Shown piece by piece: positions 3,900-24,477 of a stretch of DNA of 64,000 nucleotides (position 1 is the stretch's first letter; the number at the start of each line of letters is the position of its first letter). A model generated the notes under the pieces. It was not told the DNA's origin and searched no databases. It saw only the letters and a list, made by a program, of their open reading frames with translations. The stretch spans positions 1 to 64,000 of IMG/VR virus record IMGVR_UViG_3300022921_000002; one strand, 5' to 3'. Position numbers and translations under genes: made by a program.

Positions 3900-3927
3900 T
3901 TGACAATAAAAGAGAGTATGTTATAAT
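3900..3927 (+). promoter_or_regulatory. Consensus sigma70 promoter with extended -10, antisense to the late genes
   Basis: TTGACA (3900-3905), 16-bp spacer ending in TGT, then TATAAT (3922-3927). No credible plus-strand gene downstream. Confidence 0.6.
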
Positions 3928-7788: not shown

Positions 7789-7796
7789 TATTTATT
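7789..7796 (-). promoter_or_regulatory. T4-type late promoter variant (AATAAATA)
   Basis: AATAAATA overlapping the stop codon of the 3119-aa gene, 30 nt upstream of the 128-aa gene. Confidence 0.5.
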
Positions 7797-10700
7797 CTTT
7801 ATTGCTCATGAGCATTGTAACCATTTCTGTCAATTTGTCAATGGCTTTTTTCTGCTCATCTATTTGCTTTTGTTGTTTATTTATTGTTTCCTGCTGCTCT
7901 TTTGTTGACTCAATAAGTAGTCCAACCATGTTGCCATAGTTAACTGCTTTACGTTTACCACCGCCAGCATCATTTGGATCGAGTGTGTCAATCTCATAAA
8001 CAATACCTGGTAAAACTTTTTCAACTTGTTGAGCGATAACGCCGGTATGTCGGCCATCACGGTCGATATATTTATAAGTGATACCATCAAGTGACATTAC
8101 CTTTTCAACAGCATTATCAATAACTTCAACATCTTCTTTATAGCGGATATCCGAGAAATCAACATATGCTGTAATATTCTCATCACACTGAATAGCACCA
8201 TAAGAATTTATCCCATTCATCAGTGACGTGCCGGCGGGATTAGTGTAATATGTGGTGTCATTTTGGTCATAGAAAATTGGAGCACGGAAAGAAGATCGAG
8301 CTTCAAAGTAATTAGATCTCGTACGACCTTCCCAGGTACCATTGTAGTAAATATATGTAATATAGTCTTGGTCAGCATAAATAATTGCTTCACCATTGTC
8401 ATGGTACATCGAGAAAATAGAACCGTCATCATCCCAATAATGCCGTCCACACGCAGTACCGTTCGAGTCGCGGTAATAAATTTCACCATGGTCGTTGTTG
8501 TTTGAACGGATTGAGCAAGTATCTGAATCATCATCGTACCAATCCCAACCATCATTCAAAGAATAAATGTTGGCGTTAATGCCATTCATACGTGAAGTTG
8601 AGGCGGGGTTTGTGTAATAGCCTGTGTCATTTTGGTCATAGAAAAGTGGTGCCCGGAATGACCCGCGTGCTTCAAAATAGCTAGATCTTGTACGACCTTC
8701 CCAAGTACCGTTATAATAAATGTAGGTGATATAATCTTCATCAGCATAAATAATTGCTTCACCGTTATCGTGGTACATTGAGAAAATTGACCCATCATCA
8801 TCCCAATAGTGTCTACCACAGGCTGTGCCATTACTATCACGGTAATAAATTTCACCGTGGTCGTTGTTATTTGAACGAATATTGAAAGTATCACCGTCAT
8901 CATCGTATAAATCCCAACCATCATTGAACTGAAGGAAGTTAAGATTAATTTGGTTCATACGAGAAGTTGATGCAAAGTCTCCGTAATAAGCACTGTCGTT
9001 TGAGTCGTAATAACGGCCTGCATACATTGATCCGCCGTTTGTACTGTTTTCATCAAGTACAGGAATTGTTCTCCAAGATCTAAACGAACTACCCCAAGTT
9101 GAGCGGAACCGAAGGTTTGTAATCGGACCACCAACCATTTGCCAACCATAACGGTTGCTACCGTTTGAGTAGTGATATGACTGAATACCAACCCAGTGAG
9201 AAGTACCTGAAGGCTGGTTGCCTGGGTTTGACCACGAGTCAATAAATCCTGAACCCCAGTCAGCAACAGTGGAGGTCATATCTTGACGACCCCAACCCAT
9301 GGCGCCTGTCCAATAGTCGCTGTTACTTGTAATACGAATACGAGCACGATAGTATTCACCACTATCACGAGTATGCCCAGGCATTGATAGGTAAGACATT
9401 GTTTGGTTGTTCACACCACGGAAACGAGTAGAGTTGGTTGAACCGCCGTTAAACATACCAAAGGTATCATTTGAGTCATACCATAATTGACCGCGTGCCG
9501 ATGAACCTTCAAACAGACCGTAGTCAGCACCAACAATTCTAAATCTCCAACTTGCACCGTTATTAAGGAAACCAACGTTGTTACCATTGTCGGCATACAC
9601 ATAGCCACGAACGGTACCAGCATACTCATCTCTAAACCTAATACCGTTTGCGCCGGTGCCACCAGCAATGTTCCAATAATCATCGTTATCAGAATACCAA
9701 TGTTGCCCTGATCCTTGGTTATATAGACCTTCACCAGAGTTATCGTTGCGGAACCAGTTTCTTGCATAGAATTCGTTACCACGAACACCGGTGTTAAAGT
9801 TAGAGAATGACGATGGATCACAATAGTAACCAGTATTATTTGAGTCATAAAAGATTGGTGCTCGGAGTGAGCTTGATGCTTGTGTTACACCATCATTTCT
9901 TGCTTGGAATACCCAAGTGTTTGTAATATTACCTGAACCGGCACCATGTTGTCCAAGATATATACCAGATCCGTTATCGTTATTGTTATTTGAGTCGGCA
10001 TTAAAATAAAAGTTGTTATATGAGTTAAATCTCAAATCATCAGAAATACCACCACCGTTATTACGTGAGGAAATACTATGATAATCAGAATCATTACCGT
10101 AGAATGTGATAAAGTCACCGCGGTCACGCATATCGAGCCTATCAGCACGAACTGTAACCATTTCAGATGTTGAATTTGGATTTACATAGTAACCTGTGTT
10201 GTTACTATCATAAAAGATTGGTGCTCTTAAAGATGAGCCAGCTTGCAAGTTATTATTAACATAGACGTTATTTGCACCTAAAGGATCAGAACCGTTGTTA
10301 ACTGACATAACCTGAGTAGCCATGTTATAATCATTATAAAAACGCATACCTTGGTAGCTAGCGTTTGCACCAAACTTAATACCTGTATGGAATGCAATGC
10401 GCATATCTGGGTATGGGTATGACCAACCACCAGATTCTCGGTAAATAGCGTAAGCAGTAGATCTTCCTGAATCCCAGTATAAACCAAAGCCATCGTTAGA
10501 AGAAACAGCGCCATCATTTGTAAAGTAATTGGCTCGGACGTTATTAAATCGAGAAGTACTTGCCGGATCTGCGTAATAGGACGTGTTATTTCGGTCATAC
10601 ATAATCGGTGTATCAATTCTTGAATTGAACAACGTCTGACCATCGCCACGCATAATAACATTCCATTGGCCACCTACACCGCCATCACGGAATGAGATAT

Positions 10701-13700
10701 CCTCACCACCTGATGTTGCAATAATTAAGTGAGCATCATTAGTATCAGTAGATTGAATATACCCACGAGTGTTTCCTGCTGATGTTTGGAAATGAGCAAT
10801 ACCACCACTAACATGGTATGTGGTATTAACATTAATTTGGTTCATACGTGAAGTCGATGCAAAGTTACCATAATAACCTGTATTATCTAGGTCATAGAAT
10901 ATCGGTGCACGGAACGAACCGTTTTGTGATACATATCCGTCTGAGTTATAAAGACGGTGACCGTATGTTAGTTTCCAATGTTTTGTTGGATAAGAGTCAT
11001 TACCACCTAATGCAACATACATCCCGGTATCATTATCACCCCAACCACTTGCTCTTTTATAAAGACCCACGTTCATATGAGTTCTATAACCTGAGTTATA
11101 TAAAGCAGTTGTATGTATAAGTGGCAAGAACGTGTTTGTTGTTCCTACATTTGTATCACGGTTTCTTGTTGAAATAGGAGCATTTGTTAAGCTTGTAACA
11201 GCAGTTGCGTCATAATCCAACACATTATCAATATACATAATACCATTGAATGTCGCCGTACTTGCAGTACTTAGTGAACCATTCAGCGTTAAGCTATTAA
11301 ATACTGATGTACTCGCCATATTTGCGTAGTAGCCTGTATTATCTTGGTCATAGAAAATTGGTGCTCGATAAGAACCGCGAGCTTGCATATAACCGCTTGC
11401 TGATACTTCTTCCCACTGTCCATTATAATACAATTCAGTACGGCCGTTGTCAAACCATCTTGTCATCCATTCGTTGCGCGTATCGTTATAGATACCTGCT
11501 TCTGCTGAGCCGTTTGACATAAAGACCCAGTCATTACGAATTGCATAACCAGCCCAAGAACTTGTTTTATCACCTTCAACTCTAATTGAACCGTAGTCAC
11601 CTGATGGTGAGTCAATTATGTATTCCGAACCATCAAGCTGAATTTGATTAACACGAATAACATTCATACGTGAGGTTGATGCAAAGTCACCATAGTAATC
11701 TGTGTTGTTTGAGTCATAAAAAATTGGTGAACGCATTTGAGCAGGAGCGATAGCATAACCTGATCTTGTTTCTAATTGTACTACGTTATGCGCATATATT
11801 TTAACCTTATTGGTGTTACCATTTGATCCATCGTTCTGTGCAACAATTATATTATGAGAACCACCTGAACCACCGCGGAGATGAAGTCCACGATAAACAT
11901 TCCAATACATTCCATCAAAGCCAGTATTAGCTGCGCCGCGAGCGCCAGGTCCGCCATAATAATGGTTCCAAAGAACGTGGTTAGTATCAGTACCGCCGTT
12001 AAACCATATACTGTTATGAGTATAAGCACGATTTAATCTTAAACCGTAATTTCTTATTTCTACATTATGTAAAACTGATTGGCTATTAGGATCAACAAAA
12101 TAGTTGCCATCGTTTGCATCAACAAATCTTTGAGCATGGGAATAACGACCAGTGAATGTGTCACCATCAGACTCAATACGGAAACGTGATGTTCCTGCAC
12201 CTGATCCTGTTGTGAAGTGGAGATTACCACCGGAGTTGGTTGTCAAATTATTTGGAGATTCATAAATCTTCCAATCATTACCGCCTTTCCAACGAATACC
12301 TTCTTGAGGACCTGGGTCATTGAATGAAAGATTGTTTAGATTTTCAATTGAACCGTTTGTCCAATCCCAAGAACCTGCAACCTTACCGCCCGAAGCAGGG
12401 TTCATAAAGTAAGCAGTATTATCTCTATCTCTAAAGTTACTAGCATCAACTATATTCATTTTAGATGTGCTTGACGGATCAACGTAATAAGAATTATTAT
12501 CAGAGTCAATCATACTTGCAGCATAAATGCTATCAGGTGTACGAATACGGTTTTGAATATTTGAGCGTTTTAGAATTGGTGGACCGTACTCACGAAGAGC
12601 ACCACCTGTGCTATGATTCATTAATAGACGGATACGAATGTATTTACAACCTGCGCCGTCAGAACCATTATAAACTGTATGGCTTGTTGGAATTGTTGTA
12701 TATCCACGGTATGTTTGCCACGAAGTAGATGTTTGGTTTGAGTTACTTGCAACAAAGTACGTGGTGCCTGCATTAGAAGAAATTGGCTTTTTATCTTTAT
12801 CGTATCTTTCAATACCATAATAAACAACACCGCCTGAACCAGATATTGTTCTTACTGAAACCTCACCGTAAATTTCTTCGCCAGGTTCAACAGGAATATA
12901 ATCAGAATAGAAATCACGGTATCCCGACGTTCTTAGTGCGTAAGTTGCAGAGAATGGGCCGTTACCGTTTTTAACGTATTCACTTGTTACAGTGGTAGGT
13001 CCATTTTCAGCACCTTGTAATGCTTTGATTGCGCGCTTTTCCCAATACTCAGTTCCGTCAAATACCATGGTTTCGGCAAAGCCTGGTCCATAAACTGGGT
13101 TCAATGATATATTTTCATTGCCTGCGTTTAGATTATAGTTTGAGGCAGCCATTTCACCATCAATGAGCATATCGCCGTCTTCATTGATACGTGCTTTATC
13201 GCCAATGCCGTTGAAGTGAATAATAAAGGCATCTCTATCACCTGATCCTGAATTATAATTATCGTGGACAATCCATGGGTAATTACCATTGTTTGTAAAC
13301 GAGAGATTGCTGTTACGGAAACCTGCAAGATATCTGTTATTATGCCAAATTCCTAATGGATATGATCCACCAATATAGTCACCGCCATTGCCGAGTGCCA
13401 ATTGGTTCATACGAGATTTTGCATTAAAGTCACCACGATAGGCAGTATCGTTACTATCATAATAAATTGGTGAACGCATTTGAACCGGTGCTAAAGCATA
13501 ACCGACTTCTGCTGAAATTTGGTGAACACCATTTCCATACAAACGAGTCCAACTGTTTCTATCAGCATATAATACCCACTCATTATCAGTATCGTTATAA
13601 AGACCCATATTGGACAAGCTGTCTGACATAAATACCCAGTCATTTTCAATGGCATAACCTGCGTAACCGCCTTTACCACCTTGTACCATAATAGTACCGT

Positions 13701-16700
13701 ACTGACCTGATGGTGAGTCAATAATATATGATGTTTGGTCCATTTGAATTTGATTTAGGTGAACAACATTCATACGTGAAGTTGATGCAAAGTCACCAAA
13801 GTAAGAAACATTGTTTGAGTCAACAAATACTGGTGCACGCATTTCTGCGGTGTGAGAAATCCTGTCCGCATTAATAATCGTGTGGTTTACGCCGTCGGTA
13901 TAGAATTTATAACCAACATCAGAGTTGAACCACATATGGTCACTCTCGATACCGATTGAGTAATCTCTGCCTGATCCAATAGGATAAAGAATTAATCTTG
14001 CACCTGTTGTGGCATCGGTAGCCGTTGGAGCATTTGGTGTTTCGGTATCAAATTCAATCTGATGCATAACAGACTTGCCAGCAAAATCACCATAATAGTC
14101 ATTATCATTATAGTCATAGTATATTGGGAAATAGGCATAAGAAGTTGCGTCAAAGGCATATGCACCGCCATCGTGGTAAGTAGGCTTATTAAAAAAGAAC
14201 CTAGCACGGTCAGTATCAAAATGCGAATACGTTGCATCCATTGGACCAATATCAACACGGCCAGTTGGTGTTGAGAATCTATGAGCAGAGTTAGTATTTG
14301 GGTTCCAGCTATAATCTGTATCGGCGCTATCTTTAAAGATTGGCGCACGGATTTCGTGGTCAATTTGAGCATATGTGTTATTAATAACAGCACGGCGTGT
14401 TCCGCCTGTGTAGAATACTTGCTGATCTGCGGCATCAAAACCAAAATAGTTATTTGTATCACCTTTATGGATAATATAATCATCAAGCTGAATTTGGTTC
14501 ATTACTGATGTGCCAGCAAACTCACCTCTATAATTGGTGTCAGTATAATCGTAATAAATTTCAGCATACATATTACCCGCGGTGGATATGTTTTTACCGT
14601 TGCGTACTTTAACGTCATTGGCATCGGTCATATAGAAACCGCCACCTTGACCAAACCCAAGCTCATTATTTTTAAAGAACGAGGCAGTACCGTTACCTAC
14701 AACATAAGCATCATCGTTGCTATTTAATTGAACTGATCCGTTGACGTGTAGTTTATTATCTGTATTAGTACCAACAAGCGGTGTCATATCACCAGTAGTA
14801 TATTGTGCAGTTTGGTCACCGACAACAACATCGCCTGTGCTTGTATCGGCACTTAACGTAAAATTTGCACCTGAGTCAATAATATAGAAACCTGCATCAC
14901 CTTCCATAACATTGTAAATATTTCTGAACTGGTCACCACGAATGGATAGGTCAGTTGAATCACCATCACTGAAATCAACATATCGGTTTGTCGAAGCAAA
15001 TGGGTTCGCTCCCATTGTTGAAGTTTGTTTAATACTCAATGGCGAAGTTGGTGCTACATTAATACCAAAGTTTACACCTGTCTGCAATGCAGTTGAACTT
15101 GAGTCAAGTGTTGTTACTCCACCTACAACTAATTCAAAATTATCATCGGAGTCATATCCGAAATAAGTATCAGGATCACCGTTGTGTTTTATATAATCAT
15201 TAATGATTACGTTATTCGTAAATGTAGTTGCAGCATCTGTAATTTGAACTCTGACAGCACCACCTGTTGATAAATCAATCTGATCCGTACCGAATGAAAG
15301 TTTAGTATCGGTATCACCATTGTGGAATAAGTCATCATCAATACCAATATCATTTATAACTGATGTTCCTGCAGGATCAACAAGATATGCATTGTTATCT
15401 GAGTCGAGTAATCTTGGTGCAATCAAATCAACTGATGATGTAACCGCACTATTAGTAATTTCTAATCTTGTTGCTCCACCTGTGTCCAAATCAATTGTGT
15501 CGGTGTCAAACGAAAGTTTAGTATCAGTATCGCCGTTATGGAAAAGATCACTATTAATTCCAATCGTATTCATTACTGATGTACCGGCAAAGTCACCAAG
15601 GTACGTATTATCATCACTATCTAAATATCGAGGAGCCTTTACATCAACCGATGCTGTAACTGCAGTATTAGAAATTTCTAATCTTGATGTGCCACCTGTT
15701 GCTAAATCAATTTGATCTGTATCAAATGAAATCTTTGTGTCAGTATCACCATTATGGAATAAGTCATCGTCTAAACCAACTGAATGTAAAACTGAGTCAC
15801 CAGCAGGATCAACAAGATAACTATTATCGTCGGCATCTACAAACCTTGGAGCAATTGCATCGCCTGTGCTTGTGATGGTACCGGTTATTTCTGTTCCTGT
15901 TGTGCTTACATCAATTTGCTTTACACCGTTGAGATATAGTACCCAACTATCATCGGCATCAAAACCAAAATATGAATTTAAATCACCATTGTGGCTAACG
16001 TAATCATCAATAGATATTGAGGCAAGTACTGATCCACTTGCAGGATCAACAAGATAAGTATTATCATCAGCATCTACGAATTGTTTTGCAACTATGTTAT
16101 TATCAACAACCCAATCAAAACTTGTATTTAATTGAGCACCGTAGTTTTGGTCAGGTTTTAAGAAACCAATTACACCGTTGTTTGAATAAAGTACACCGTC
16201 TGTACCTGAGCCGTCAAGGTTAATTCTTGCACCGCCGACATTATCACCAATAGTCAAATTACCTTCAATAGTGATATTACCTGTTGCGGTATCATCAGCA
16301 TCAGAACGTAGGAATTGTTCTGCTTCTAATCCGTCAACTGTATCAGCATCAAACGAGTTACCTGAGCCTTCATCGGCTGTTGTAATGATACGACCTAAAT
16401 CTGTGCCATCTGAAATGAGTTTAAAGTAATCATTTGTTTCATCCCATTGTATAGAAGAAACACTTTCATCACCACGAAGTACTTCCCAACCAGCGTTTTC
16501 TGTTGGTGTACCTGATGTAAAATTAGAATTAAGAGTAAGAATATTATCAGCAATTAAAACGGTTTCAGTATTTACAGTAGTTGTTGTACCGTTGATTGTT
16601 AGATTACCAGTAATAATATAATTACCGTCCAATGTATCATCGGTATCTGAACGTACGAATTGTGTTGAATCTAAAGCATCAAGTAAGTCGGCATCAAGGC

Positions 16701-17151
16701 CTGATCCTGTACCGTCGTTTCCTGCGTTCCAAAATACGTTACCCAGGTATGTTGGTTCACGTTTGAAATCAATACCACCGCTATCAAACTCTAGGTCAAC
16801 AACATCATTATAAAGAATTTGAATACCAGGCGTTCCATCATAAAATATGATAGAGTTATCTTGACCTGTGTTTGTAAGTTTATAGTCACCTGCGGAAATA
16901 TATTGAATTTCCATTGAGTCTTGTGCTTCACCACGGAACCTTGCAACAATAGGATTATTGAGAAGTCCTGCATCATTGAAAATATCAATAGATGGTGTAG
17001 AACCAGTCGATTGCTGAACCGTTAATTGTCCTGAAAGTTTACTTGGTCCTGTTACCTGAAGTTTATTTGTACCATCATCGGTAGTGGTACCTACAACAAC
17101 ATTATTTTGGGTCTGCAGACCATGCTTTACTATAAATTTCTTATCGGCCAC
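7792..17151 (-). CDS. Giant modular long tail fibre (3119 aa) with a C-terminal peptidase S74 intramolecular chaperone
   Basis: GTG start with a strong SD; LDADLLD motif; about 21 copies of an AP(I)F(Y)DxxNTxYYxDPASTS linker. C-terminal SDIRYKEDV...GVIAQQVEKVLP...VNYGNMVGLLIESTKE plus a coiled coil is the S74 pattern. Confidence 0.85.
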   Translation of the reverse strand: MADKKFIVKHGLQTQNNVVVGTTTDDGTNKLQVTGPSKLSGQLTVQQSTGSTPSIDIFNDAGLLNNPIVARFRGEAQDSMEIQYISAGDYKLTNTGQDNSIIFYDGTPGIQILYNDVVDLEFDSGGIDFKREPTYLGNVFWNAGNDGTGSGLDADLLDALDSTQFVRSDTDDTLDGNYIITGNLTINGTTTTVNTETVLIADNILTLNSNFTSGTPTENAGWEVLRGDESVSSIQWDETNDYFKLISDGTDLGRIITTADEGSGNSFDADTVDGLEAEQFLRSDADDTATGNITIEGNLTIGDNVGGARINLDGSGTDGVLYSNNGVIGFLKPDQNYGAQLNTSFDWVVDNNIVAKQFVDADDNTYLVDPASGSVLASISIDDYVSHNGDLNSYFGFDADDSWVLYLNGVKQIDVSTTGTEITGTITSTGDAIAPRFVDADDNSYLVDPAGDSVLHSVGLDDDLFHNGDTDTKISFDTDQIDLATGGTSRLEISNTAVTASVDVKAPRYLDSDDNTYLGDFAGTSVMNTIGINSDLFHNGDTDTKLSFDTDTIDLDTGGATRLEITNSAVTSSVDLIAPRLLDSDNNAYLVDPAGTSVINDIGIDDDLFHNGDTDTKLSFGTDQIDLSTGGAVRVQITDAATTFTNNVIINDYIKHNGDPDTYFGYDSDDNFELVVGGVTTLDSSSTALQTGVNFGINVAPTSPLSIKQTSTMGANPFASTNRYVDFSDGDSTDLSIRGDQFRNIYNVMEGDAGFYIIDSGANFTLSADTSTGDVVVGDQTAQYTTGDMTPLVGTNTDNKLHVNGSVQLNSNDDAYVVGNGTASFFKNNELGFGQGGGFYMTDANDVKVRNGKNISTAGNMYAEIYYDYTDTNYRGEFAGTSVMNQIQLDDYIIHKGDTNNYFGFDAADQQVFYTGGTRRAVINNTYAQIDHEIRAPIFKDSADTDYSWNPNTNSAHRFSTPTGRVDIGPMDATYSHFDTDRARFFFNKPTYHDGGAYAFDATSYAYFPIYYDYNDNDYYGDFAGKSVMHQIEFDTETPNAPTATDATTGARLILYPIGSGRDYSIGIESDHMWFNSDVGYKFYTDGVNHTIINADRISHTAEMRAPVFVDSNNVSYFGDFASTSRMNVVHLNQIQMDQTSYIIDSPSGQYGTIMVQGGKGGYAGYAIENDWVFMSDSLSNMGLYNDTDNEWVLYADRNSWTRLYGNGVHQISAEVGYALAPVQMRSPIYYDSNDTAYRGDFNAKSRMNQLALGNGGDYIGGSYPLGIWHNNRYLAGFRNSNLSFTNNGNYPWIVHDNYNSGSGDRDAFIIHFNGIGDKARINEDGDMLIDGEMAASNYNLNAGNENISLNPVYGPGFAETMVFDGTEYWEKRAIKALQGAENGPTTVTSEYVKNGNGPFSATYALRTSGYRDFYSDYIPVEPGEEIYGEVSVRTISGSGGVVYYGIERYDKDKKPISSNAGTTYFVASNSNQTSTSWQTYRGYTTIPTSHTVYNGSDGAGCKYIRIRLLMNHSTGGALREYGPPILKRSNIQNRIRTPDSIYAASMIDSDNNSYYVDPSSTSKMNIVDASNFRDRDNTAYFMNPASGGKVAGSWDWTNGSIENLNNLSFNDPGPQEGIRWKGGNDWKIYESPNNLTTNSGGNLHFTTGSGAGTSRFRIESDGDTFTGRYSHAQRFVDANDGNYFVDPNSQSVLHNVEIRNYGLRLNRAYTHNSIWFNGGTDTNHVLWNHYYGGPGARGAANTGFDGMYWNVYRGLHLRGGSGGSHNIIVAQNDGSNGNTNKVKIYAHNVVQLETRSGYAIAPAQMRSPIFYDSNNTDYYGDFASTSRMNVIRVNQIQLDGSEYIIDSPSGDYGSIRVEGDKTSSWAGYAIRNDWVFMSNGSAEAGIYNDTRNEWMTRWFDNGRTELYYNGQWEEVSASGYMQARGSYRAPIFYDQDNTGYYANMASTSVFNSLTLNGSLSTASTATFNGIMYIDNVLDYDATAVTSLTNAPISTRNRDTNVGTTNTFLPLIHTTALYNSGYRTHMNVGLYKRASGWGDNDTGMYVALGGNDSYPTKHWKLTYGHRLYNSDGYVSQNGSFRAPIFYDLDNTGYYGNFASTSRMNQINVNTTYHVSGGIAHFQTSAGNTRGYIQSTDTNDAHLIIATSGGEDISFRDGGVGGQWNVIMRGDGQTLFNSRIDTPIMYDRNNTSYYADPASTSRFNNVRANYFTNDGAVSSNDGFGLYWDSGRSTAYAIYRESGGWSYPYPDMRIAFHTGIKFGANASYQGMRFYNDYNMATQVMSVNNGSDPLGANNVYVNNNLQAGSSLRAPIFYDSNNTGYYVNPNSTSEMVTVRADRLDMRDRGDFITFYGNDSDYHSISSRNNGGGISDDLRFNSYNNFYFNADSNNNNDNGSGIYLGQHGAGSGNITNTWVFQARNDGVTQASSSLRAPIFYDSNNTGYYCDPSSFSNFNTGVRGNEFYARNWFRNDNSGEGLYNQGSGQHWYSDNDDYWNIAGGTGANGIRFRDEYAGTVRGYVYADNGNNVGFLNNGASWRFRIVGADYGLFEGSSARGQLWYDSNDTFGMFNGGSTNSTRFRGVNNQTMSYLSMPGHTRDSGEYYRARIRITSNSDYWTGAMGWGRQDMTSTVADWGSGFIDSWSNPGNQPSGTSHWVGIQSYHYSNGSNRYGWQMVGGPITNLRFRSTWGSSFRSWRTIPVLDENSTNGGSMYAGRYYDSNDSAYYGDFASTSRMNQINLNFLQFNDGWDLYDDDGDTFNIRSNNNDHGEIYYRDSNGTACGRHYWDDDGSIFSMYHDNGEAIIYADEDYITYIYYNGTWEGRTRSSYFEARGSFRAPLFYDQNDTGYYTNPASTSRMNGINANIYSLNDGWDWYDDDSDTCSIRSNNNDHGEIYYRDSNGTACGRHYWDDDGSIFSMYHDNGEAIIYADQDYITYIYYNGTWEGRTRSNYFEARSSFRAPIFYDQNDTTYYTNPAGTSLMNGINSYGAIQCDENITAYVDFSDIRYKEDVEVIDNAVEKVMSLDGITYKYIDRDGRHTGVIAQQVEKVLPGIVYEIDTLDPNDAGGGKRKAVNYGNMVGLLIESTKEQQETINKQQKQIDEQKKAIDKLTEMVTMLMSNKE
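8210..8925 (-). repeat. Tandem duplication with a 369-nt (123-aa) period inside the fibre tip
   Basis: NDGWD...RSNNNDHGEIYYRDSNGTACGRHYWDDDGSIFSMYHDNGEAIIYAD.DYITYIYYNGTWEGRTRS.YFEAR.SFRAP.FYDQNDT occurs twice; the anchor CCATCATT is at 8549 and 8918. Confidence 0.9.
15250..16030 (-). repeat. Tandem coding repeats of 216 nt (72 aa) in the N-terminal part of the fibre
   Basis: DDLFHNGDTDTK(I/L)SF(D/G)TD(Q/T)IDLxTGG unit with anchors at 15311, 15527 and 15743, plus diverged flanking copies. Confidence 0.85.
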
Positions 17152-17183: not shown

Positions 17184-17191
17184 TATTTATA
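17184..17191 (-). promoter_or_regulatory. T4-type late promoter TATAAATA
   Basis: Exact TATAAATA overlapping the stop codon of the 807-aa gene, 33 nt upstream of the 3119-aa fibre start. Confidence 0.75.
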
Positions 17192-19610
17192 CGTCAATCA
17201 GTGTTGCCACTATTTTGTATGTTGTACTATTACTACTTGCTGGTGTTCCAACAATTTTAACGTCACCGCTACTTAAACTTACATCATATTCTGCAAGTTC
17301 AGAACTTGTTGTAATGGTAGCAAACTCTGTTGCGTGTGCGGTTGTTCCGTTATGTGTTACCAATATTTTTGTCGTATGTCTTTCAGCACCATCTTTTGCG
17401 GTAATAACAATTTCAGCACTGCCGTAAGTTGAGGCATCAAATGTATAGATATCCTGCGGGAAAATGGTTGATGTTGTAACTTCGGTAGAAACAGATCTTG
17501 ACTCATCTTGAATAATATCATCATTGACAGTCAAGGAGCCAGACATCGTATCGCCGGTTACATTAACGTATCTTAAATCACCTTGTGCTTCTGTGATAAA
17601 ATTTCTTGTTTCTTTTGTTGCTGTCTGTACGTGACCATGGGTGTCAAACGTAATACCTGTTAAGAATTCAAGTGTACCAAATGTCTCATCGGCAACAGAA
17701 GAAGTATCGCCGTGGTCAATTGTAACATTGGCGGTTAAGGCACCACCACCCGTCAGTGCAGTACCTGCAATTACTTGTACTGTATTATCAACCTTATCGT
17801 CTAATAAATTATCTACTTCTGTTTCTGTATAATAACGGCCATCTAAATCAGTAGATGTTGTTGTTTGAACGTGACCATATGTGTCAAATGTAACACCAGT
17901 AAGTACGTTACCATCTGCTAATGAAACATCAACCACGCTAGATGTATCGGAGTGGTCCAAAGTTATAATAATATCGGTAGAATCATTTAAATTAAATGTG
18001 CCTGATCCGTCGATTGCGTTACCACCATTTACTTGAACTTCACCATTACCAATTTGACCTGCCGCAGAGTTAGCAGCTTGTGCTAAAATATCAGATGCGT
18101 GTAGACCATCAAGCCTATCGGCATCAAGGTTTGATCCTGTTCCATCGTTTGACGTATCATAAAATCCAAGAGCACGAATATCAGCAGCGGTTTGGTCGGC
18201 AGTTGCACCGTCCTCAATTAAATCAAGTTTAGCACCGTCAACCGAAACGTCACGGCCATCAACAGTACCTGTAATAATTATATTTCCATTAACTGTGATT
18301 TCATCAAACTCGTCAACGGTAACATAATAACTACTGCCATCACCAGTTTCTAACACCAATGTGCTATTAGCGGAAACCCAACTAAAGTCATCAACACCAG
18401 CAACGGCGGTTGTTGAAGCAGCAGTAATACGACCATCTTCATCAACGGTTATAACAGGAATAGCGGATGCAGTACCATATTGCCCAGGAGTTACACCAGT
18501 ATTTGCTAATTCAGTTACAAAAGAAATAGTACCAGAATTGTTTGTACCTGTACCTTCAATATCACCTGTGAGTGTAACTGTTAATCCATCAAGCTCTGCA
18601 CCGTCTGCTGAAACATCCCGGCCATCAACAGTACCGTTACCTACCATTGTGATTTCATCAAACTCACTAATTTCTGTTGAATAAACAGAACCGTCGGATG
18701 TAGCAATATTAAATGTTGAGTTAGCGCTTGTCCAAGATGTTGCCGAAACACCAGCAACAGCAGCAGTTGTAGCGGCAGTAATACGACCGTCTTCGTCAAC
18801 TGTAATGACAGGCACCAATGAAGATGAACCGTAAGATCCTGAAGTTACACCGGTGTTTGCTAATTCGGTTACAATGTCAAGGATTGATGTATTAGATGTG
18901 GCAGTACCTTCAATATCACCAGTTAAGTTAACAGTAATATCAGTTTCTAATGTATCTAATCTTGCACCGTCTGCAGCTATGTCGCGGCCGTCTACAAGAC
19001 CTGTAACAGCAATGTCGCCGTTAACTGTAATGCCTGTAAACTCATTTATAACCGCGTCATAGTTGGTTCCATCGGATGTAGCAATCCTTAGAGTGTTGTT
19101 TGCAACGGTCCATGTGAAGTCATCAACACCACCAACAGAAGTTTCAGATGCCGCTGTAATTCTTCCGTCTTCATCAACTGTAATAACTGGTATTTGTGAG
19201 GATGAACCATATTGTGCAGGGGTAACACCGGTATTTGCCAACTCGGTGATGAGTTCCATAACACCTGTATTTGAAAAGGCAGTACCTGTTACTTTACCTG
19301 ATAATGTTAAATCAAAGGTGGCAGGTGGTACGTTTGTAAAATTATTATAATCAAGATAATACGTACCTTCTTGACCATCAAGGAGATCAGCATCTAAACC
19401 TGATGTTGCACCGTCAACGGTTTTAATAAGTGTAAGTAAATCTGCGGCGTGTGGTGATAGTTCTTCTATAAAGCTAACACTTGAATTACCCGACTTAAAG
19501 TAAACTTTACCGTCCGCGGTGTTAATAGCGATTTCGCCGAATTCTAATTGTGCTGTATTCGGTACTCGACCGGGAATACTACTCCTGCGGAGCTTAATTG
19601 TTGTTGACAT
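17187..19610 (-). CDS. Tail fibre protein with an Mtd-N/hyaluronidase-like N-terminus and three internal repeats
   Basis: MSTTIKLRRSS...LEFGEIAINTADGKVYFK N-terminus; three copies of ELANTGVTxGxYGxSxxIPVITVDEDGRITAA; two LDADxLDG motifs. Confidence 0.75.
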   Translation of the reverse strand: MSTTIKLRRSSIPGRVPNTAQLEFGEIAINTADGKVYFKSGNSSVSFIEELSPHAADLLTLIKTVDGATSGLDADLLDGQEGTYYLDYNNFTNVPPATFDLTLSGKVTGTAFSNTGVMELITELANTGVTPAQYGSSSQIPVITVDEDGRITAASETSVGGVDDFTWTVANNTLRIATSDGTNYDAVINEFTGITVNGDIAVTGLVDGRDIAADGARLDTLETDITVNLTGDIEGTATSNTSILDIVTELANTGVTSGSYGSSSLVPVITVDEDGRITAATTAAVAGVSATSWTSANSTFNIATSDGSVYSTEISEFDEITMVGNGTVDGRDVSADGAELDGLTVTLTGDIEGTGTNNSGTISFVTELANTGVTPGQYGTASAIPVITVDEDGRITAASTTAVAGVDDFSWVSANSTLVLETGDGSSYYVTVDEFDEITVNGNIIITGTVDGRDVSVDGAKLDLIEDGATADQTAADIRALGFYDTSNDGTGSNLDADRLDGLHASDILAQAANSAAGQIGNGEVQVNGGNAIDGSGTFNLNDSTDIIITLDHSDTSSVVDVSLADGNVLTGVTFDTYGHVQTTTSTDLDGRYYTETEVDNLLDDKVDNTVQVIAGTALTGGGALTANVTIDHGDTSSVADETFGTLEFLTGITFDTHGHVQTATKETRNFITEAQGDLRYVNVTGDTMSGSLTVNDDIIQDESRSVSTEVTTSTIFPQDIYTFDASTYGSAEIVITAKDGAERHTTKILVTHNGTTAHATEFATITTSSELAEYDVSLSSGDVKIVGTPASSNSTTYKIVATLIDV

Positions 19611-19632
19611 ATCTATGCCTCTTTGTTATAAT
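19604..19632 (+). promoter_or_regulatory. Consensus sigma70 promoter with extended -10, antisense to the late genes
   Basis: TTGACA (19604-19609), 17-bp spacer ending in TGT, then TATAAT (19627-19632). Followed immediately by the palindrome AGGTATATACCT (19633-19644). Confidence 0.55.
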
Positions 19633-19672
19633 AGGTATATACCTTAAATGATAATCTATATGGTTTGTCTAA

Positions 19673-22600
19673 TTAAAATGATCCACCGTCAATCTCATTA
19701 ACAGCAATTGAAACAGTTCCCGAAGTGACAGTTGTATCTACACCATCAACACCATTGAACTGTAATGTTTCACCTAAAGTGATTGCTGTATTAGCATCGG
19801 TTTCATCAGAAACAGTAAATGTCGGGTTTGCCATTTTAGCATTAGTAACACCGCCATCTTTTAATTGTAACGTATCAGCAACAATCTCAATTCCGGTGTC
19901 ATCAACATTAACTGAGAAATCTGTTCCTGTTAATGTTAAACCTTCACCACCTGAATATGTGCCAGCACCAGAGAACTGATACCAGATCACATCACCAACA
20001 CCTAGAACAAATCCTTCAGCATCGGCAACTGTTGCTACATAACCTGTATTTTTATTTTGAGTACCATCAGTTACGAATTGAAATGCACCAGGAATTTCTG
20101 ATGTTTCATTAAAGTATTCACCACGAGTAAGTACCCATGCTGTTGTACCATCGCCGACAGTTGTTACTTCGTATGAACCGTTTTCAATTTCATCAGTCTG
20201 ATCTTTAACAAGTACTCTATCACCAACTGACCACTCTGTTACACCATCCAATTCAAATGCAGCAAGTGTACCGTTGTTTGTGAGTGTCCCATCAGTGTTA
20301 TTATATGTTGCACCTAAATCAGCAGTTGTTGCAGCAAGCGCCGACGGAATAACTCTTAAACCTTGAGCAACACTATCAACATAAACCTTTGTAGCTGCAT
20401 CCTGGTCATTTGTAGGATCAAGTAGGTTTAGTAATCTGTTGTTACTAAAATCAATTGTATTTGTTGATGAGTCAATTGAGTTATTATCAAATGTAAGATC
20501 GGCAACATCTAATTGAGTTTCAATATTAACTTGTTTTAAATTTGAATCTGTGCCACCTGGGTGTAAGAAATATGATGTGGATTCAGTATCAACAAATCTT
20601 TCGGCAATTACATCACCGCTTTCCACATAGAAATCTGATGTATCTTTACGGCCATAGAACACATAGTTAAATGCATTATTGAGCTGACCGATTTTTGTAC
20701 CATCAGAATAAAGTGTTGCGGTTCCTGTAGAACCTTCCATTTTAATTTGAGCAGCGTTTTGTAAATAACCAACACGGATTGAGTTTAATTGAGATTCAGA
20801 TGCAAAATCACCATAGAACCTAACATCAGAACTATCACGGAACCGAGGTGCATCAAGGTTACCGGTCATTGTATCACCAGTTACGTTGATATATCTTGCA
20901 TCAATTGTACCGACATTAAGTGCAACATTTTGGGCATATCCTGGTGCAGGTGTGCCTGTTGTTGTGATACCAAATCCTGCCGTAACAGAACCGACATAAT
21001 TAGCGGTAATCTCAACATTCATTTTATCGGTTGGGTCATCATATACAATAGAAACTCCGTCTTCGGTATTGTTTCTAAACATTTCACCAATAAGATCGTG
21101 TACCGTTTCTGTAAAGTCAGGAATAGCGTTTGCTTGAAGCTCAACGGGAATTTCTGTAGCAAATGTAACTTGACCTTGTTCGTTAAGAACAACACGAGCA
21201 GTAAAACCATCGTTACCATATGAACCTGGTGTAACACCTGTATCCTGAATACCGATACTAATTGCATTATTACCAGCATCTTCATCAAAGGCAATAAGAC
21301 CATTACCAAGTGTAAGTGTTGGGTTTTGAATGAGGTTAACTGAGTTAAATGTGTTTGCTTCATCAATAACTGTTAACTGTGAAGTAAATGCACTGGCAAG
21401 ATAACCTAATGGCACAGCATCAGTATTTGCTACAGGTGTACCAACGTTTGTAATAACATGGCCGCTTACATCAATTTGATCTGAAGCTGTATTTGCGCCA
21501 AGTACAAGATCACCGTTTGCGGATATAATACTATTTTCATCTAAAATAACATCATCAACCACCATTTTTCCATTGACAGAAAATAATCCTGTGTTATAAT
21601 CAATTATAACTTTTGATAATCCACTACCAAATTTAAATGATCCATCAGAATCAATCTGCATGGCAATCTGATTATTTGCAAAGAAATCTAATTGGTTATT
21701 ATCAGCACCTGGTGAAGACTCGGCACGTATAAAGGTATTTTGGTCAACATCAATAACACCACCAAGGCCTGTCCATGCTGTGCCATTGTATGCTTCAAAT
21801 CTAGCATCCTGTGTGTTATAACGGATCATACCTTGTTCGGCTGTAGGTCTTTCCGACACATTCCCAACTGGAATTATGAAACCACCTGTAGAATTAACTT
21901 TTACAACATCAGCGGTAAGTTTAATAAAGTCAGCAGCATTTCTTATTTCAGCAACATATGCCGCTAACCAATCTTTAGTTGCAGATCCCAATGTATAAGT
22001 ATCAGTTACATCAGGGATTAAGTTACTTTCAAAATCAGCACTAACTGTAATTGCGTCTGTATCGGCATCACCGATTTGAATATTACCACCAATAGTTACA
22101 TTACCTGTTACACCAAGGTTACCGCTGATTTGCGTATCACCTGTTAAGTAATCAATTGTAAACTTATTTAATCCATCACCAAATTTAAACAAACCAACTT
22201 CAGATAGTTGTAATCTTTCGGTACCTGCTGTAAAGAATTGTATTTGGTCATTATCGGCACCGCTTGATGATTCGGCAACAATTTTTGTATCTCGGTCAAG
22301 GTCAATAACTGAACCTGCAATTGAACTCCATGAACCTGTATTATCAAATCCTTCAAACCTTTGGTCATCTGTATTATAACGGATCATCCCAGTTTGAGGT
22401 GAAGGTCTTTCGAGTGTTGTACCTTTCGGGAATTGAATTGCGCCAGTCAGATTAAACTCTGCAACTTCACTATGACCTAATTGAATATTATCGTTAATGG
22501 TAATAGAGCTATTTGCTTCAATACTACCATTCGTATTAATAATAAGTTGCTGTGTTCCACCAACAAAGAATTTTAATTCATCGTTGTCGGCATTCGGTGT

Positions 22601-24040
22601 TGTTTCCGCCTGAACAAATGTATCTTGGTCGGTGTCAATTGTACCGCCTAAACCTGCCCAAGCTATACCATTATAACCTTCAAACCTTGTCTGATCGGTG
22701 TTGAAACGTACCATACCTGCAGCAGGCTGTGTTCTTTCTGCCTGTGTTCCAACAGGTAATACCAAACCACCATTCCCAACAATTGTTAGAACATTATCAG
22801 GTGTATTAATGGTATCAAGAATTTGCTGTTCGTTTACACTAAACTCAGTTCCTGTTAATGTTAAACCTTCACCAGCAGTGAATGTGCCAACACCTTGGAA
22901 TTGAACCCAATTAATTGAATGAACGTCAATCTCAAAAGTTTCGGCATCAGCAACAGTTGCAACAAAACCTTTATTCTTGTTTACAATACCATCGGTTACA
23001 AACTCAAAAGTACCTGGTATTTCAACACTTTCATTATTGAAATCCGATCTTGCAAAAATCCATTCCAAATTAGCAGTTGGATCACCAACCTGTATAAGGT
23101 CATAAGAACCGTTTTCAACAGGGTTTGCCTGATCTTTAACAAGAAGTTGTGATCCTACAGTCCAATTTGAAACACCATCAATTTCAATTGTAAAGGCTTC
23201 AGGTAATGTGATTGTGGTATCTATCGACGAGTTACCAGCTTCAAATACAGCACCTGGGAATGTAATACTAATATCTTCGGTTGTTGCTGCAAGTGATGAT
23301 GGGCGAACCGAAATACCTTGGGCAACATTATCAACGTATCTTTTATTTGTTGCGTCAGTTGGTTTAACGGGATCTGAGATAATCAAAAGACTTAATTCAA
23401 GTGCTTCGAGTGTATCACCAAGATAGTTATTTGTAACAACGTCATACGGATCAATAGGATCACGGACATTAACAATTCTATGGTTTGTCATATCAATGAC
23501 GTTATCAACAGGTGGCGTTAAGGTAATATTACCTGTTCCTGAAATCCCAGAACCTGTAATTGTTAGGTCGCCAACCTGTATAAGGTTTAGCCCTAAGAAT
23601 TGGTCAGTTGTTCCACCTAATGTAATTGCAGTATTACCAAACGTAATATCGTTTGAACTGATTATATTATTAGCTGCTGTAAAGTTTGTAGGATTTAATT
23701 CTGTGTTTGTTAAATCAGTCAAATGCCCAAATTGGTCAAGTGAAATATTTTTAACAAAACCTAATGGAGAGTTTGCGGTGTTTGCTTGGTCTGATGTATT
23801 AACGTGGGTAATAGTTACATTAGCGGACTCGCCGCCATCACCGCCAAGTGTTTGAACCGTAATGCCGTCGCCTGCAAAAATCTCTCTTGTATATGGACCA
23901 ATCGTATCAACACCAAGTACAACAGAATCAGGTACAATAACCGGTTTCTTTTCACCTTGGGCAATAATTGGTCTTAATGTGTCTTGCTTCGGTACCGAAC
24001 GGATTGAACGTGAACCGCCGACTTTTACTTTAATGGCCAC
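19673..24040 (-). CDS. Large repetitive virion structural / tail fibre protein (1455 aa)
   Basis: Two copies of DA(A/T)xKxYVDxVAQG...VKDQ...ENGSY...FVTDG...QFxGxGT. Three copies of PxGxxxERP..GMIRYNT..FEGY..W...IDxDxDT...DNDxxxFF. Confidence 0.75.
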   Translation of the reverse strand: MAIKVKVGGSRSIRSVPKQDTLRPIIAQGEKKPVIVPDSVVLGVDTIGPYTREIFAGDGITVQTLGGDGGESANVTITHVNTSDQANTANSPLGFVKNISLDQFGHLTDLTNTELNPTNFTAANNIISSNDITFGNTAITLGGTTDQFLGLNLIQVGDLTITGSGISGTGNITLTPPVDNVIDMTNHRIVNVRDPIDPYDVVTNNYLGDTLEALELSLLIISDPVKPTDATNKRYVDNVAQGISVRPSSLAATTEDISITFPGAVFEAGNSSIDTTITLPEAFTIEIDGVSNWTVGSQLLVKDQANPVENGSYDLIQVGDPTANLEWIFARSDFNNESVEIPGTFEFVTDGIVNKNKGFVATVADAETFEIDVHSINWVQFQGVGTFTAGEGLTLTGTEFSVNEQQILDTINTPDNVLTIVGNGGLVLPVGTQAERTQPAAGMVRFNTDQTRFEGYNGIAWAGLGGTIDTDQDTFVQAETTPNADNDELKFFVGGTQQLIINTNGSIEANSSITINDNIQLGHSEVAEFNLTGAIQFPKGTTLERPSPQTGMIRYNTDDQRFEGFDNTGSWSSIAGSVIDLDRDTKIVAESSSGADNDQIQFFTAGTERLQLSEVGLFKFGDGLNKFTIDYLTGDTQISGNLGVTGNVTIGGNIQIGDADTDAITVSADFESNLIPDVTDTYTLGSATKDWLAAYVAEIRNAADFIKLTADVVKVNSTGGFIIPVGNVSERPTAEQGMIRYNTQDARFEAYNGTAWTGLGGVIDVDQNTFIRAESSPGADNNQLDFFANNQIAMQIDSDGSFKFGSGLSKVIIDYNTGLFSVNGKMVVDDVILDENSIISANGDLVLGANTASDQIDVSGHVITNVGTPVANTDAVPLGYLASAFTSQLTVIDEANTFNSVNLIQNPTLTLGNGLIAFDEDAGNNAISIGIQDTGVTPGSYGNDGFTARVVLNEQGQVTFATEIPVELQANAIPDFTETVHDLIGEMFRNNTEDGVSIVYDDPTDKMNVEITANYVGSVTAGFGITTTGTPAPGYAQNVALNVGTIDARYINVTGDTMTGNLDAPRFRDSSDVRFYGDFASESQLNSIRVGYLQNAAQIKMEGSTGTATLYSDGTKIGQLNNAFNYVFYGRKDTSDFYVESGDVIAERFVDTESTSYFLHPGGTDSNLKQVNIETQLDVADLTFDNNSIDSSTNTIDFSNNRLLNLLDPTNDQDAATKVYVDSVAQGLRVIPSALAATTADLGATYNNTDGTLTNNGTLAAFELDGVTEWSVGDRVLVKDQTDEIENGSYEVTTVGDGTTAWVLTRGEYFNETSEIPGAFQFVTDGTQNKNTGYVATVADAEGFVLGVGDVIWYQFSGAGTYSGGEGLTLTGTDFSVNVDDTGIEIVADTLQLKDGGVTNAKMANPTFTVSDETDANTAITLGETLQFNGVDGVDTTVTSGTVSIAVNEIDGGSF

Positions 24041-24043
24041 GTG

Positions 24044-24370: not shown

Positions 24371-24400
24371 ATCTCAATTCTCTTTTTATGCTATTTACTT

Positions 24401-24408
24401 TATTTATA
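24401..24408 (-). promoter_or_regulatory. T4-type late promoter TATAAATA
   Basis: Exact TATAAATA in an intergenic gap, just downstream of a terminator and 31 nt upstream of the 108-aa gene. Confidence 0.78.
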
Positions 24409-24426
24409 ATATTCTCATCCATATTT

Positions 24427-24455
24427 AAAAAAAGGGAGCACAAAGCCCCCTCTTT
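24427..24455 (-). terminator. Rho-independent terminator after the collagen-like gene
   Basis: Minus strand reads GGGGGC-TTTGT-GCTCCC-TTTTTTT: a 6-bp stem with one G:U pair, followed by a 7-T run. Confidence 0.8.
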
Positions 24456-24477
24456 AACTTGTGCTATGGGAATATCA

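What the first reader, a model, noticed from the sequence alone, without database searches (positions are those of the whole stretch)
19604..19644. Second consensus antisense sigma70 promoter, with a 12-bp palindrome over its start site (site 2)
TTGACA-N17-TATAAT with an extended TG overlaps the start codon and RBS of the 807-aa fibre gene on the opposite strand. The perfect palindrome AGGTATATACCT (19633-19644) follows at once and looks like an operator. My rough estimate at about 60% AT is ~0.1 perfect -35/-10 pairs expected by chance in 64 kb on both strands, before requiring TG. Two hits, both extended, both at gene junctions and both antisense, suggest a deliberate antisense control layer on structural genes. 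This is my best candidate for an undescribed regulatory system here. Caveat: this -35 is partly forced by the codons ATG-TCA-A.
Basis: partly seen in the sequence, partly recalled or inferred. Interest (0 to 1): 0.65.

Follow-up and report, generated by a model that had tools for sequence, protein, structure and literature searches.

The report
Conserved antisense promoter in phage fibre genes
A textbook-perfect bacterial promoter points backwards across the start of a tail-fibre gene in an uncultured T4-like phage; relatives keep it and its sister sites by natural selection, so it is real, but backward promoters in phage structural genes are already known and the adjacent palindrome is not its operator.

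Summary
TTGACA (19604-19609), a 17-nt spacer, TGT-TATAAT (19624-19632) and the palindrome 19633-19644 lie antisense over the RBS and ATG of the 807-aa fibre gene.

The window is the first 64 kb of a 221-kb T4-like phage with a gp55-like late sigma and TATAAATA late promoters. It uses sigma70 promoters for its early genes.

The window holds three perfect extended -10 antisense promoters, not two: 3900, 19604 and 21573. Shuffles give 0.22.

Relatives with about 45-56% fibre identity keep such promoters antisense in the same fibre cluster:
- 34 IMG/VR contigs carry site 2.
- Site 1 keeps its hexamers while its spacer has diverged.
- Site 3 is held by a rare Val codon (GTC, 5.5% usage).
- Distant relatives carry them at other positions in the same gene.

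The palindrome is older than the promoter. It occurs, with compensatory changes, in relatives that lack the -10, and it is unique in the genome. An operator role is therefore not supported; it is probably a hairpin in the fibre mRNA leader.

The most likely function is early non-coding antisense transcription or RNA polymerase occupancy that restrains the fibre operon. The main rival is an R-loop replication origin like T4 oriG, whose primer RNA is also antisense inside tail-fibre gene 34. No strand-resolved RNA data were available. I class it as a new member of a known kind.

The parts
19604..19609 (+). -35 hexamer TTGACA of antisense promoter site 2. It is the reverse complement of TGTCAA within ATG-TCA-A of the fibre gene.
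   Evidence: present in nearly all relatives because ATGTC(A/G)AC is conserved
19624..19632 (+). Extended -10, TGT-TATAAT, 17 nt from the -35.
   Evidence: Near-invariant in the window's subclade: 34 IMG/VR contigs, 17 distinct true sequences, while spacer bases vary. Absent from more distant relatives.
19639..19639 (+). Predicted antisense transcription start (A, 7 nt after the -10).
   Evidence: Inference from promoter geometry; not mapped.
19633..19644 (-). HP1: the palindrome, or small hairpin (4-6 bp stem, AUAU loop), in the fibre-gene leader, centred 28 nt before the ATG.
   Evidence: Compensatory changes in 17 relatives: 92.9% of cells paired, 25 double-change cells, 0/500 shuffles as high. 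Present without the antisense -10. Unique in the genome. Thermodynamically weak.
19606..19619 (-). HP2: a small hairpin, GGCAU-AGAU-AUGUC, that pairs the AUG and the end of the Shine-Dalgarno.
   Evidence: The 5' arm GRCAT is conserved in non-coding sequence, and the G/A change keeps pairing only on the sense strand.
19618..19623 (-). RBS AAGAGG of the fibre gene, lying inside the antisense promoter's spacer.
19645..19672 (.). A+T-rich non-coding spacer between the stop of the 1455-aa gene and HP1. It forms the first ~35 nt of the predicted antisense transcript.
   Evidence: AT 0.72 for +1..+50. In relatives it is 20-40 nt of almost pure A+T, and it is absent from relatives without the -10.
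17187..19610 (-). 807-aa tail-fibre gene.
   Evidence: PHROG tail fiber families
19673..24040 (-). 1455-aa virion/fibre-cluster gene. Transcripts from sites 2 and 3 would be antisense to it.
21573..21600 (+). Site 3: perfect TTGACA-N16-TGT-TATAAT antisense inside the 1455-aa gene (peptide DYNTGLFSVN).
   Evidence: Kept in diverged relatives with the rare GTC Val codon and with AAC Asn.
3900..3927 (+). Site 1: perfect TTGACA-N16-TGT-TATAAT, antisense and wholly intergenic.
   Evidence: In the homologous intergenic region of relative G005 the hexamers and TG are kept while the spacer is completely different.
10302..10331 (+). Near-consensus antisense site, CTGACA-N18-TGT-TATAAT, inside the 3119-aa gene.
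   Evidence: not followed up in relatives.
24401..24408 (-). T4-type late promoter TATAAATA, heading the operon 24370->17187 that the antisense transcripts would oppose.
24427..24450 (-). Minus-strand intrinsic terminator (GC stem plus T7) after the collagen-like fibre gene.
   Evidence: read directly. The G.U pair works only on the minus strand.

Best explanation
Site 2 is a genuine promoter for the host sigma70 RNA polymerase. It is one of a small, selectively maintained set of perfect-consensus, extended -10 promoters that point against the late tail-fibre gene cluster of this T4-like phage family.

Such promoters need no phage factor, so they should fire as soon as the DNA enters the cell. 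Polymerase bound at site 2 covers the RBS and first codons of the 807-aa fibre gene. From about 19639 it makes a non-coding RNA that runs antisense through the intergenic region into the 1455-aa gene. Site 3, 2 kb further on, does the same for the rest of that gene, heading towards the late promoter at 24401.

The most likely role is 'anti-late' control. Antisense RNA, head-on transcription or promoter occupancy would keep the fibre operon silent or tuned down until gp55-dependent late transcription takes over.

Shown: the motif, its non-random excess, its conservation, and selection at synonymous and non-coding sites. Inferred: that it fires in vivo, when it fires, and what effect it has on the sense genes.

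The palindrome is not part of this device. It is an older hairpin element of the fibre mRNA leader that happens to lie at the antisense start site.
For: - The phage uses this promoter type. About 50 sites match at 11/12 or better, and most are sense and intergenic in the early region 73-205 kb. Late genes instead carry TATAAATA (32 copies, 31 sense), and a gp55-like sigma is encoded.
- Excess over chance. There are 3 perfect sites in the window against 0.22 expected. There are 7 perfect+TG sites in the genome, 4 of them antisense.
- Site 2 in relatives. TGT-TATAAT is held 17 nt from TTGACA in 34 contigs (17 distinct true sequences) while spacer and palindrome arms vary.
- Site 1 in relatives. 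The hexamers and TG are conserved while the spacer has fully diverged.
- Site 3 in relatives. Val is GTC in 10 of 11 diverged homologues, although GTC is only 5.5% of Val codons in the late genes. Asn is always AAC. Third-position conservation is 0.91 inside the elements and 0.67 outside.
- Whole-record scans of 5 relatives gave 30 perfect+TG sites, with 0 for the reversed-pattern control. Every antisense one lies in the fibre cluster or at the site-1 intergenic region.
- Positional turnover. Distant relatives keep the site-3 peptide without a promoter but carry two antisense promoters elsewhere in the same homologous gene. This argues for a function tied to that gene.
- There is no conserved ORF or SD downstream and no Rfam family.
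- Precedent. Early cis-antisense RNAs within structural genes have been proposed to repress them in PAK_P3/PAK_P4 (PMC5563952). Antisense RNAs with mapped start sites are reported in several phages (PMC10914365).
Against: - There is no strand-resolved RNA evidence. Six salt-marsh metatranscriptome runs hold the region, but only as contigs, which show neither strand nor 5' ends and may include DNA carry-over.
- The site-2 RNA starts 28 nt upstream of the fibre ATG and runs away from that gene. It cannot mask the fibre RBS by base pairing; only polymerase occupancy or collision could act on that gene.
- Antisense promoters are confined to the fibre end of the late region. There are none in 24-65 kb or 207-220 kb, so this is not a general anti-late layer.
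- The -35 of site 2 is forced by coding and by hairpin HP2.
- ATTATAACA could have an unknown role in the sense leader.
- A perfect consensus with an extended -10 may escape slowly, which fits polymerase trapping or origin opening as well as RNA output.
Confidence: 0.42

Rival explanations
1. These promoters are R-loop replication origins of the T4 oriG/ori(34) type. A pre-late promoter antisense inside a tail-fibre gene makes a short RNA. That RNA stays hybridised in an A+T-rich unwinding element just downstream and primes leading-strand synthesis. Such origins are also recombination hotspots.
For: - The T4 record AF158101 annotates oriG at 152947 inside gene 34 (long tail fibre) with 'primer RNA is opposite direction of adjacent gene 34'.
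- T4 origins consist of a promoter plus an A+T-rich DUE in about 100 bp, and oriE depends on an early promoter (PMC3016281).
- The phage is T4-like, with gp55-, gp47- and helicase-like genes.
- AT content of +1..+50 is 0.72-0.86 at the five orphan promoters, against a background of 0.615 with a 90th percentile of 0.70.
- In relatives, site 2 is followed by 20-40 nt of almost pure A+T that is missing from relatives lacking the -10.
- The transcripts have no coding function.
- The genome has five orphan perfect promoters, comparable to the number of T4 origins.
Against: - The averaged AT profile of 42 antisense promoters is raised only from -26 to +34 and is no different from that of 21 sense promoters, so there is no distinct DUE signal.
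- Two promoters in tandem, 1.3-2 kb apart and in the same gene, are kept in both clades. An origin does not need this.
- Positional turnover stays within one gene, which suggests a gene-specific rather than a genome-wide role.
- There are no replication data.
Confidence: 0.3
2. One reading: a regulated antisense promoter whose start site is covered by an operator (the 12-bp palindrome) that binds a dimeric phage or host repressor.
For: A perfect 12-bp palindrome lies exactly at -6 to +6 of the predicted start. In all 17 distinct promoter-bearing relatives a palindrome follows the -10 at once, or shifted by one base in one of them.
Against: - The palindrome is present at the same distance from the fibre ATG in relatives with no antisense -10.
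- Its arms are not conserved. They covary (AGG/CCT, AGC/GCT, AGA/TCT, ACC/GGT, GCC/GGC, GATC/GATC) and only T-ATAT-A is constant.
- G.U-type pairs work only on the sense strand.
- The motif occurs once in 221 kb, and sites 1 and 3 have no palindrome.
Confidence: 0.06
3. It is a by-product without function in vivo. The -35 is imposed by Met-Ser-Thr and hairpin HP2, and the TATAAT arises from an A+T-rich leader element (ATTATAACA) that serves the sense mRNA. The match to a promoter is then incidental.
For: ATGTC(A/G)AC is conserved for coding and structural reasons. TGnTATAAT alone is common on the antisense strand of coding DNA: 17 of 28 genome copies are antisense, most without a -35. The host is unknown.
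Against: The same 9-mer at the correct spacing from TTGACA recurs at site 1 (non-coding, spacer diverged) and at site 3 (coding, held by rare codons). It also recurs at other places in relatives. A full 14-base match is expected about 0.02 times per genome from base composition (my calculation) or from codon shuffles.
Confidence: 0.1

Closest known systems
T4 oriG / ori(34)
   Same: It is a T4-type phage. A promoter of a pre-late class is embedded antisense in a long tail-fibre gene, and its transcript has no coding role (PMC3016281).
   Different: The T4 promoter is MotA-dependent (middle mode), whereas here it is a perfect sigma70 consensus with an extended -10. Here two or three such promoters lie in tandem. 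A DUE is not clearly distinguishable. Replication function is untested.
Early cis-antisense RNAs in structural genes of Pseudomonas phages PAK_P3/PAK_P4 (also antisense RNAs with mapped start sites in phiKZ, YuA, LUZ19, LUZ24)
   Same: These are antisense transcripts inside late structural genes, more abundant early in infection. They have been proposed to hold back structural gene expression, and the trait is conserved between diverged relatives (PMC5563952; PMC10914365).
   Different: Those were found by RNA-seq and their promoters are mostly undefined. Here only the promoters are seen, not the RNA. The sites are restricted to the fibre cluster, and selection is visible at synonymous sites.
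T4 translational control by start-codon-sequestering hairpins in the leaders of late genes such as e (lysozyme) and soc (from my own knowledge; not checked in a paper here)
   Same: HP2 pairs the AUG and the end of the SD of the fibre gene, and HP1 lies just upstream.
   Different: No late promoter lies inside the hairpin here, the stems are only 4-6 bp, and the function is untested. This concerns the palindrome, not the antisense promoter.
Canonical sigma70 extended -10 promoters
   Same: All consensus elements are present at optimal spacing.
   Different: The orientation is against every gene within 65 kb, and no ORF lies downstream.

Membership tests
sigma70 extended -10 promoter | -35 TTGACA, 17+/-1 nt spacer, TGn, -10 TATAAT, purine about 7 nt downstream | tested here: met
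   12/12 match, 17-nt spacer, TG present, A19639
sigma70 extended -10 promoter | The same motif heads bona fide genes in the same genome, showing that the polymerase of this host reads it | tested here: met
   about 40 sense sites at 11/12 or better, mostly intergenic, lie 20-60 nt before gene starts in the early region
sigma70 extended -10 promoter | Functional elements conserved in relatives while the spacer is free to vary | tested here: met
sigma70 extended -10 promoter | Transcription initiates there in vivo or in vitro | not testable with these tools
   Only contigs of metatranscriptomes were available, with no strand or 5' ends
phage cis-antisense RNA against late genes | Start site antisense within or next to structural genes, with a non-coding transcript | tested here: met
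   (predicted start; no conserved ORF or SD)
phage cis-antisense RNA against late genes | Early expression and a negative effect on the sense gene | not testable with these tools
   No time-resolved, strand-specific data; the host is unknown
T4 oriG-type R-loop origin | Pre-late promoter with no coding role, antisense in a tail-fibre gene | tested here: met
T4 oriG-type R-loop origin | A+T-rich DNA unwinding element directly downstream of the promoter | tested here: inconclusive
   AT 0.72-0.86 at +1..+50 and a nearly pure A+T spacer in relatives. However, the averaged profile equals that of sense promoters and falls to background by +34.
T4 oriG-type R-loop origin | Persistent R-loop, and replication starts there | not testable with these tools
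   Needs infected cells or raw-read depth profiles
operator-controlled promoter | Operator half-sites conserved in sequence and linked to the promoter | tested here: not met
   The arms covary instead of being conserved. The palindrome is present without the -10 in distant relatives. It is unique in the genome.
T4-type late promoter (for the fibre gene itself) | TATAAATA about 30-60 nt before the start codon | tested here: not met
   absent from 19611-19672. The nearest upstream copy on the minus strand is at 24401.

The most novel reading that the evidence does not exclude
The antisense perfect-consensus promoters are the replication origins, and hence the recombination hotspots, of this uncultured T4-like lineage. 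They are kept inside tail-fibre genes just as T4 keeps oriG in gene 34. Placing origins in fibre genes would then be an ancient, selected feature of the T4 superfamily, possibly coupling replication initiation to host-range gene exchange. It would also be recognisable from sequence alone, as orphan sigma70 promoters held by synonymous-site selection.
Probability: 0.25. Interest if true: 0.72.

Novelty: new member of a known kind. Interest (0 to 1): 0.5.

Why it matters
It gives sequence-only evidence from many uncultured relatives that antisense host-type promoters inside phage structural genes are kept by selection rather than arising as noise. Three observations support this: rare codons are held in place, spacers diverge while hexamers stay, and positions turn over within one gene.

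That makes the long-standing question of what 'anti-late' or antisense transcription does in large lytic phages testable at defined sites. It also offers a simple way to look for T4 oriG-like origins in metagenomic T4-like genomes.

It also corrects a tempting misreading. The palindrome at the start site belongs to the fibre mRNA leader, not to the promoter.

Tried and rejected
- Megablast of the fibre region against 50,697 phage records found no match. Protein searches gave only distant hits: about 42% identity to cyanophage and Sinorhizobium T4-like phages. No transcriptome of a cultured close relative can therefore be borrowed.
- Rfam over the whole window found nothing.
- Metatranscriptomes: six RNA runs hold the region, but only as contigs. 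Four were laid. Depth, strand and 5' ends are not interpretable, and contig breaks near 21594-21628 are not evidence.
- DUE test: the AT profile around 42 antisense and 21 sense promoters shows no difference, so it does not separate the origin model from the asRNA model.
- Hidden genes: there is no conserved ORF or SD downstream of the antisense promoters, so a protein-coding role is rejected.
- The palindrome as a repeated genomic signal: the stem-T(A/T)TATA-stem motif is not enriched (4 found against 7.6 in shuffles) and only this copy lies before a gene. A general regulatory motif is rejected.
- Hairpin thermodynamics: the two leader hairpins are the minimum-energy fold, but at -6.2 kcal/mol and z -0.64 they are not significant on their own. 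The case rests on covariation. The alignment was anchored by my own palindrome search, so it leans towards the structure.
- Folding the first 122 nt of the predicted antisense RNA showed no structure beyond shuffles.
- The palindrome core as a late promoter: it matches TATAAATA at only 5 of 8 positions, so this was rejected.
- The site-3 promoter as a by-product of the peptide motif: rejected, because distant relatives keep the peptide (IDYNSG, IDWATG, VDYATG) without a promoter.
Full report
**What is there**

TTGACA lies at 19604-19609, followed by a 17-nt spacer, TG at 19624-19625 and TATAAT at 19627-19632. The perfect palindrome AGGTATATACCT follows at 19633-19644. On the other strand the 807-aa ORF begins at 19610 (ATG TCA ACA), with RBS AAGAGG at 19618-19623. 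The promoter geometry predicts an antisense start at A19639, in the centre of the palindrome.

**Context**

- The window is the first 64 kb of a 221,447-bp IMG/VR virus record rated complete, with 37.5% GC.
- Every credible gene in 1-65 kb is on the minus strand.
- They are virion genes: gp6-like and other baseplate wedge proteins, a subtilase-domain protein, a collagen-like fibre with a Peptidase_S74 chaperone domain, and giant ORFs of 3119, 3666 and 1819 aa. They also include the 1455-aa and 807-aa fibre-cluster proteins.
- The phage is T4-like. TATAAATA, the T4 late-promoter motif, occurs 32 times. Of these, 31 are in the sense direction and 20 are intergenic, about 20-60 nt before most starts.
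- A gp55-like late sigma factor sits next to a gp47-like nuclease and a helicase.
- The closest cultured relatives share only about 42% protein identity; they are T4-like cyanophages and the Sinorhizobium phiM12 group.
- The phage comes from salt-marsh and seawater samples.

**Is it more than chance?**

- TTGACA-N15-19-TATAAT occurs three times in the window against 0.22 expected, and no shuffle in 100 reached three. The sites are 3900, 19604 and 21573. All are on the plus strand (antisense) and all carry TGT-TATAAT.
- The whole genome has ten perfect sites, against two for the reversed-pattern control. Seven of them carry TGn.
- About 50 sites match at 11/12 or better. Most are sense, intergenic and in the early region 73-205 kb. 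The phage therefore clearly uses host sigma70 promoters for early genes, and the antisense ones are members of a working class.
- Five of the eight antisense sites at 11/12 or better are perfect, against five of about 42 sense sites.
- Codon-preserving shuffles of the late genes create a new intragenic perfect antisense site only about 0.02 times per 65 kb.

**Comparative evidence**

The fibre protein retrieved 79 related IMG/VR loci, mostly at 45-56% identity.

- Strand bias. In these loci, sites at 11/12 or better number 96 on the strand antisense to the fibre gene and 27 on the sense strand. Perfect+TG antisense sites are present in almost every relative that has a full-length fibre homologue.
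- Whole-record scans. Five relatives gave 30 perfect+TG sites and none for the reversed control. All their antisense sites lie in the fibre cluster, except one that is the homologue of site 1.
- Site 1. In relative G005 the same intergenic region lies between homologues at 69% and 77% identity. It keeps TTGACA, TG, TATAAT and the late promoter, while the 16-nt spacer is entirely different. That is the signature of a real promoter.
- Site 3. It lies in the peptide xYNTGxxxVN.
  - In 11 diverged homologues the Val codon is GTC in 10, although GTC is only 5.5% of Val codons in the late genes.
  - Asn is always AAC.
  - Third-position conservation is 0.91 inside the elements and 0.67 outside.
- Positional turnover. 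Distant relatives keep that peptide (IDYNSG, IDWATG and similar) without a promoter. They carry two other perfect antisense promoters at non-homologous places in the same homologous gene. Presence is conserved and position turns over.
- Site 2. The -35 comes for free: ATGTC(A/G)AC is conserved almost everywhere. The extended -10 is specific to the window's subclade. There it is near-invariant, occurring in 34 contigs with 17 distinct true sequences, while spacer bases and the palindrome arms vary.

**The palindrome**

- It is not tied to the promoter. A palindrome of the form NNN-T-ATAT-A-NNN lies 25-29 nt before the fibre ATG in all relatives, including those with no antisense -10.
- Its arms change by compensatory substitution. 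In 17 sequences, 92.9% of cells are paired and 25 cells have changes on both sides. None of 500 shuffles reached this, and slid controls give 15-52% pairing. The alignment was anchored on my own palindrome search, so it leans towards the structure.
- The few G.U-type pairs work only on the sense strand.
- The motif is unique in the genome.
- A second small hairpin (19606-19619) pairs GGCAU with AUGUC. It hides the AUG and the end of the SD.
- Both hairpins form the minimum-energy fold, but they are thermodynamically weak.
- I read the palindrome as part of a conserved fibre-mRNA leader, possibly translational control. Its function is unknown, and it is not an operator.

**What the promoters do**

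No conserved ORF or SD follows them and there is no Rfam match, so the transcripts are non-coding. Two known mechanisms fit.

- (a) Anti-late antisense control. Early cis-antisense RNAs within structural genes are described in PAK_P3/PAK_P4 and have been proposed to hold structural genes back (PMC5563952). Antisense RNAs with mapped starts exist in several phages (PMC10914365).
  - Three observations favour a gene-directed role: the restriction to one gene cluster, the tandem pairs 1.3-2 kb apart, and the turnover within the same gene.
- (b) An R-loop origin. T4 oriG lies inside tail-fibre gene 34 with a primer RNA opposite to the gene. T4 origins are a promoter plus an A+T-rich unwinding element, and oriE uses an early promoter (PMC3016281).
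  - The A+T-rich spacer that accompanies site 2 in relatives fits this model.
  - The averaged A+T profile of antisense promoters does not differ from that of sense promoters.

I put (a) at about 0.42 and (b) at about 0.30. A functionless by-product gets about 0.10 and the operator model about 0.06.

**RNA evidence**

Six salt-marsh metatranscriptome runs hold the region, but only as assembled contigs. Four were laid on 18600-24500. They show presence in RNA libraries, but not strand, start sites or level, and DNA carry-over cannot be excluded. This is not evidence for or against antisense transcription.

**Verdict**

The promoter interpretation is supported. The operator idea is not, and neither is the claim of an undescribed system. 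This is a new, well-supported member of a known kind.

Noticed in passing
It is conserved in relatives through rare synonymous codons.
   Followed up: yes
window 10302-10331 (+): A near-consensus antisense site, CTGACA-N18-TGT-TATAAT, lies inside the 3119-aa gene. More generally, TGnTATAAT without a -35 is common on the antisense strand of coding DNA (17 of 28 genome copies).
   Followed up: partly
window 19606-19644 (-): The fibre-gene leader carries two small conserved hairpins that flank and overlap the SD. HP1 is the palindrome. HP2 pairs GGCAU with AUGUC and sequesters the start codon. This may be translational control of the fibre gene; the function is unknown.
   Followed up: partly
window 3874, 17184, 24401, 40701, 51178 (-), and others across the genome: The T4-type late promoter motif TATAAATA lies mostly about 20-60 nt before late gene starts. 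Of 32 copies, 31 are in the sense direction. The 807-aa fibre gene has none of its own.
   Followed up: yes
window 24427-24450 (-): A clear minus-strand intrinsic terminator (GC stem with one G.U pair, then seven T) follows the collagen-like fibre gene. The late promoter at 24401 comes directly after it.
   Followed up: partly
G000 130485-130512 (-) and 164891-164918 (-), outside the window: Two further orphan perfect promoters. One lies between the helicase gene and the gp55-like sigma gene. It reads back into the helicase gene and has 86% A+T downstream. The other is antisense inside ORF 164533-165669, next to an endolysin gene. Both are candidates for the same class, or for origins.
   Followed up: partly
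window 3955-4728 (-): A cytidylyltransferase-like plus mannose-6-phosphate-isomerase/cupin fusion gene sits among the virion genes, directly downstream (antisense) of promoter site 1.
   Followed up: no
window 19673-24040 (-) and relatives L013, L041, L035: The 1455-aa protein contains a repeated domain (GGVIDVDQ...FKFG...IDYNTG) whose copy number differs between relatives. In G004 two antisense promoters lie in successive repeats and are nearly identical in sequence.
   Followed up: partly
window 21594-21628: In two low-depth metatranscriptome runs, contig pieces break or begin within about 20 nt of the predicted site-3 start. At depth 3-5 this may well be chance.
   Followed up: no
window 7792-17151 and 29675-40675 (-): Giant ORFs of 3119 and 3666 aa lie in the virion module. 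They were not characterised here.
   Followed up: no
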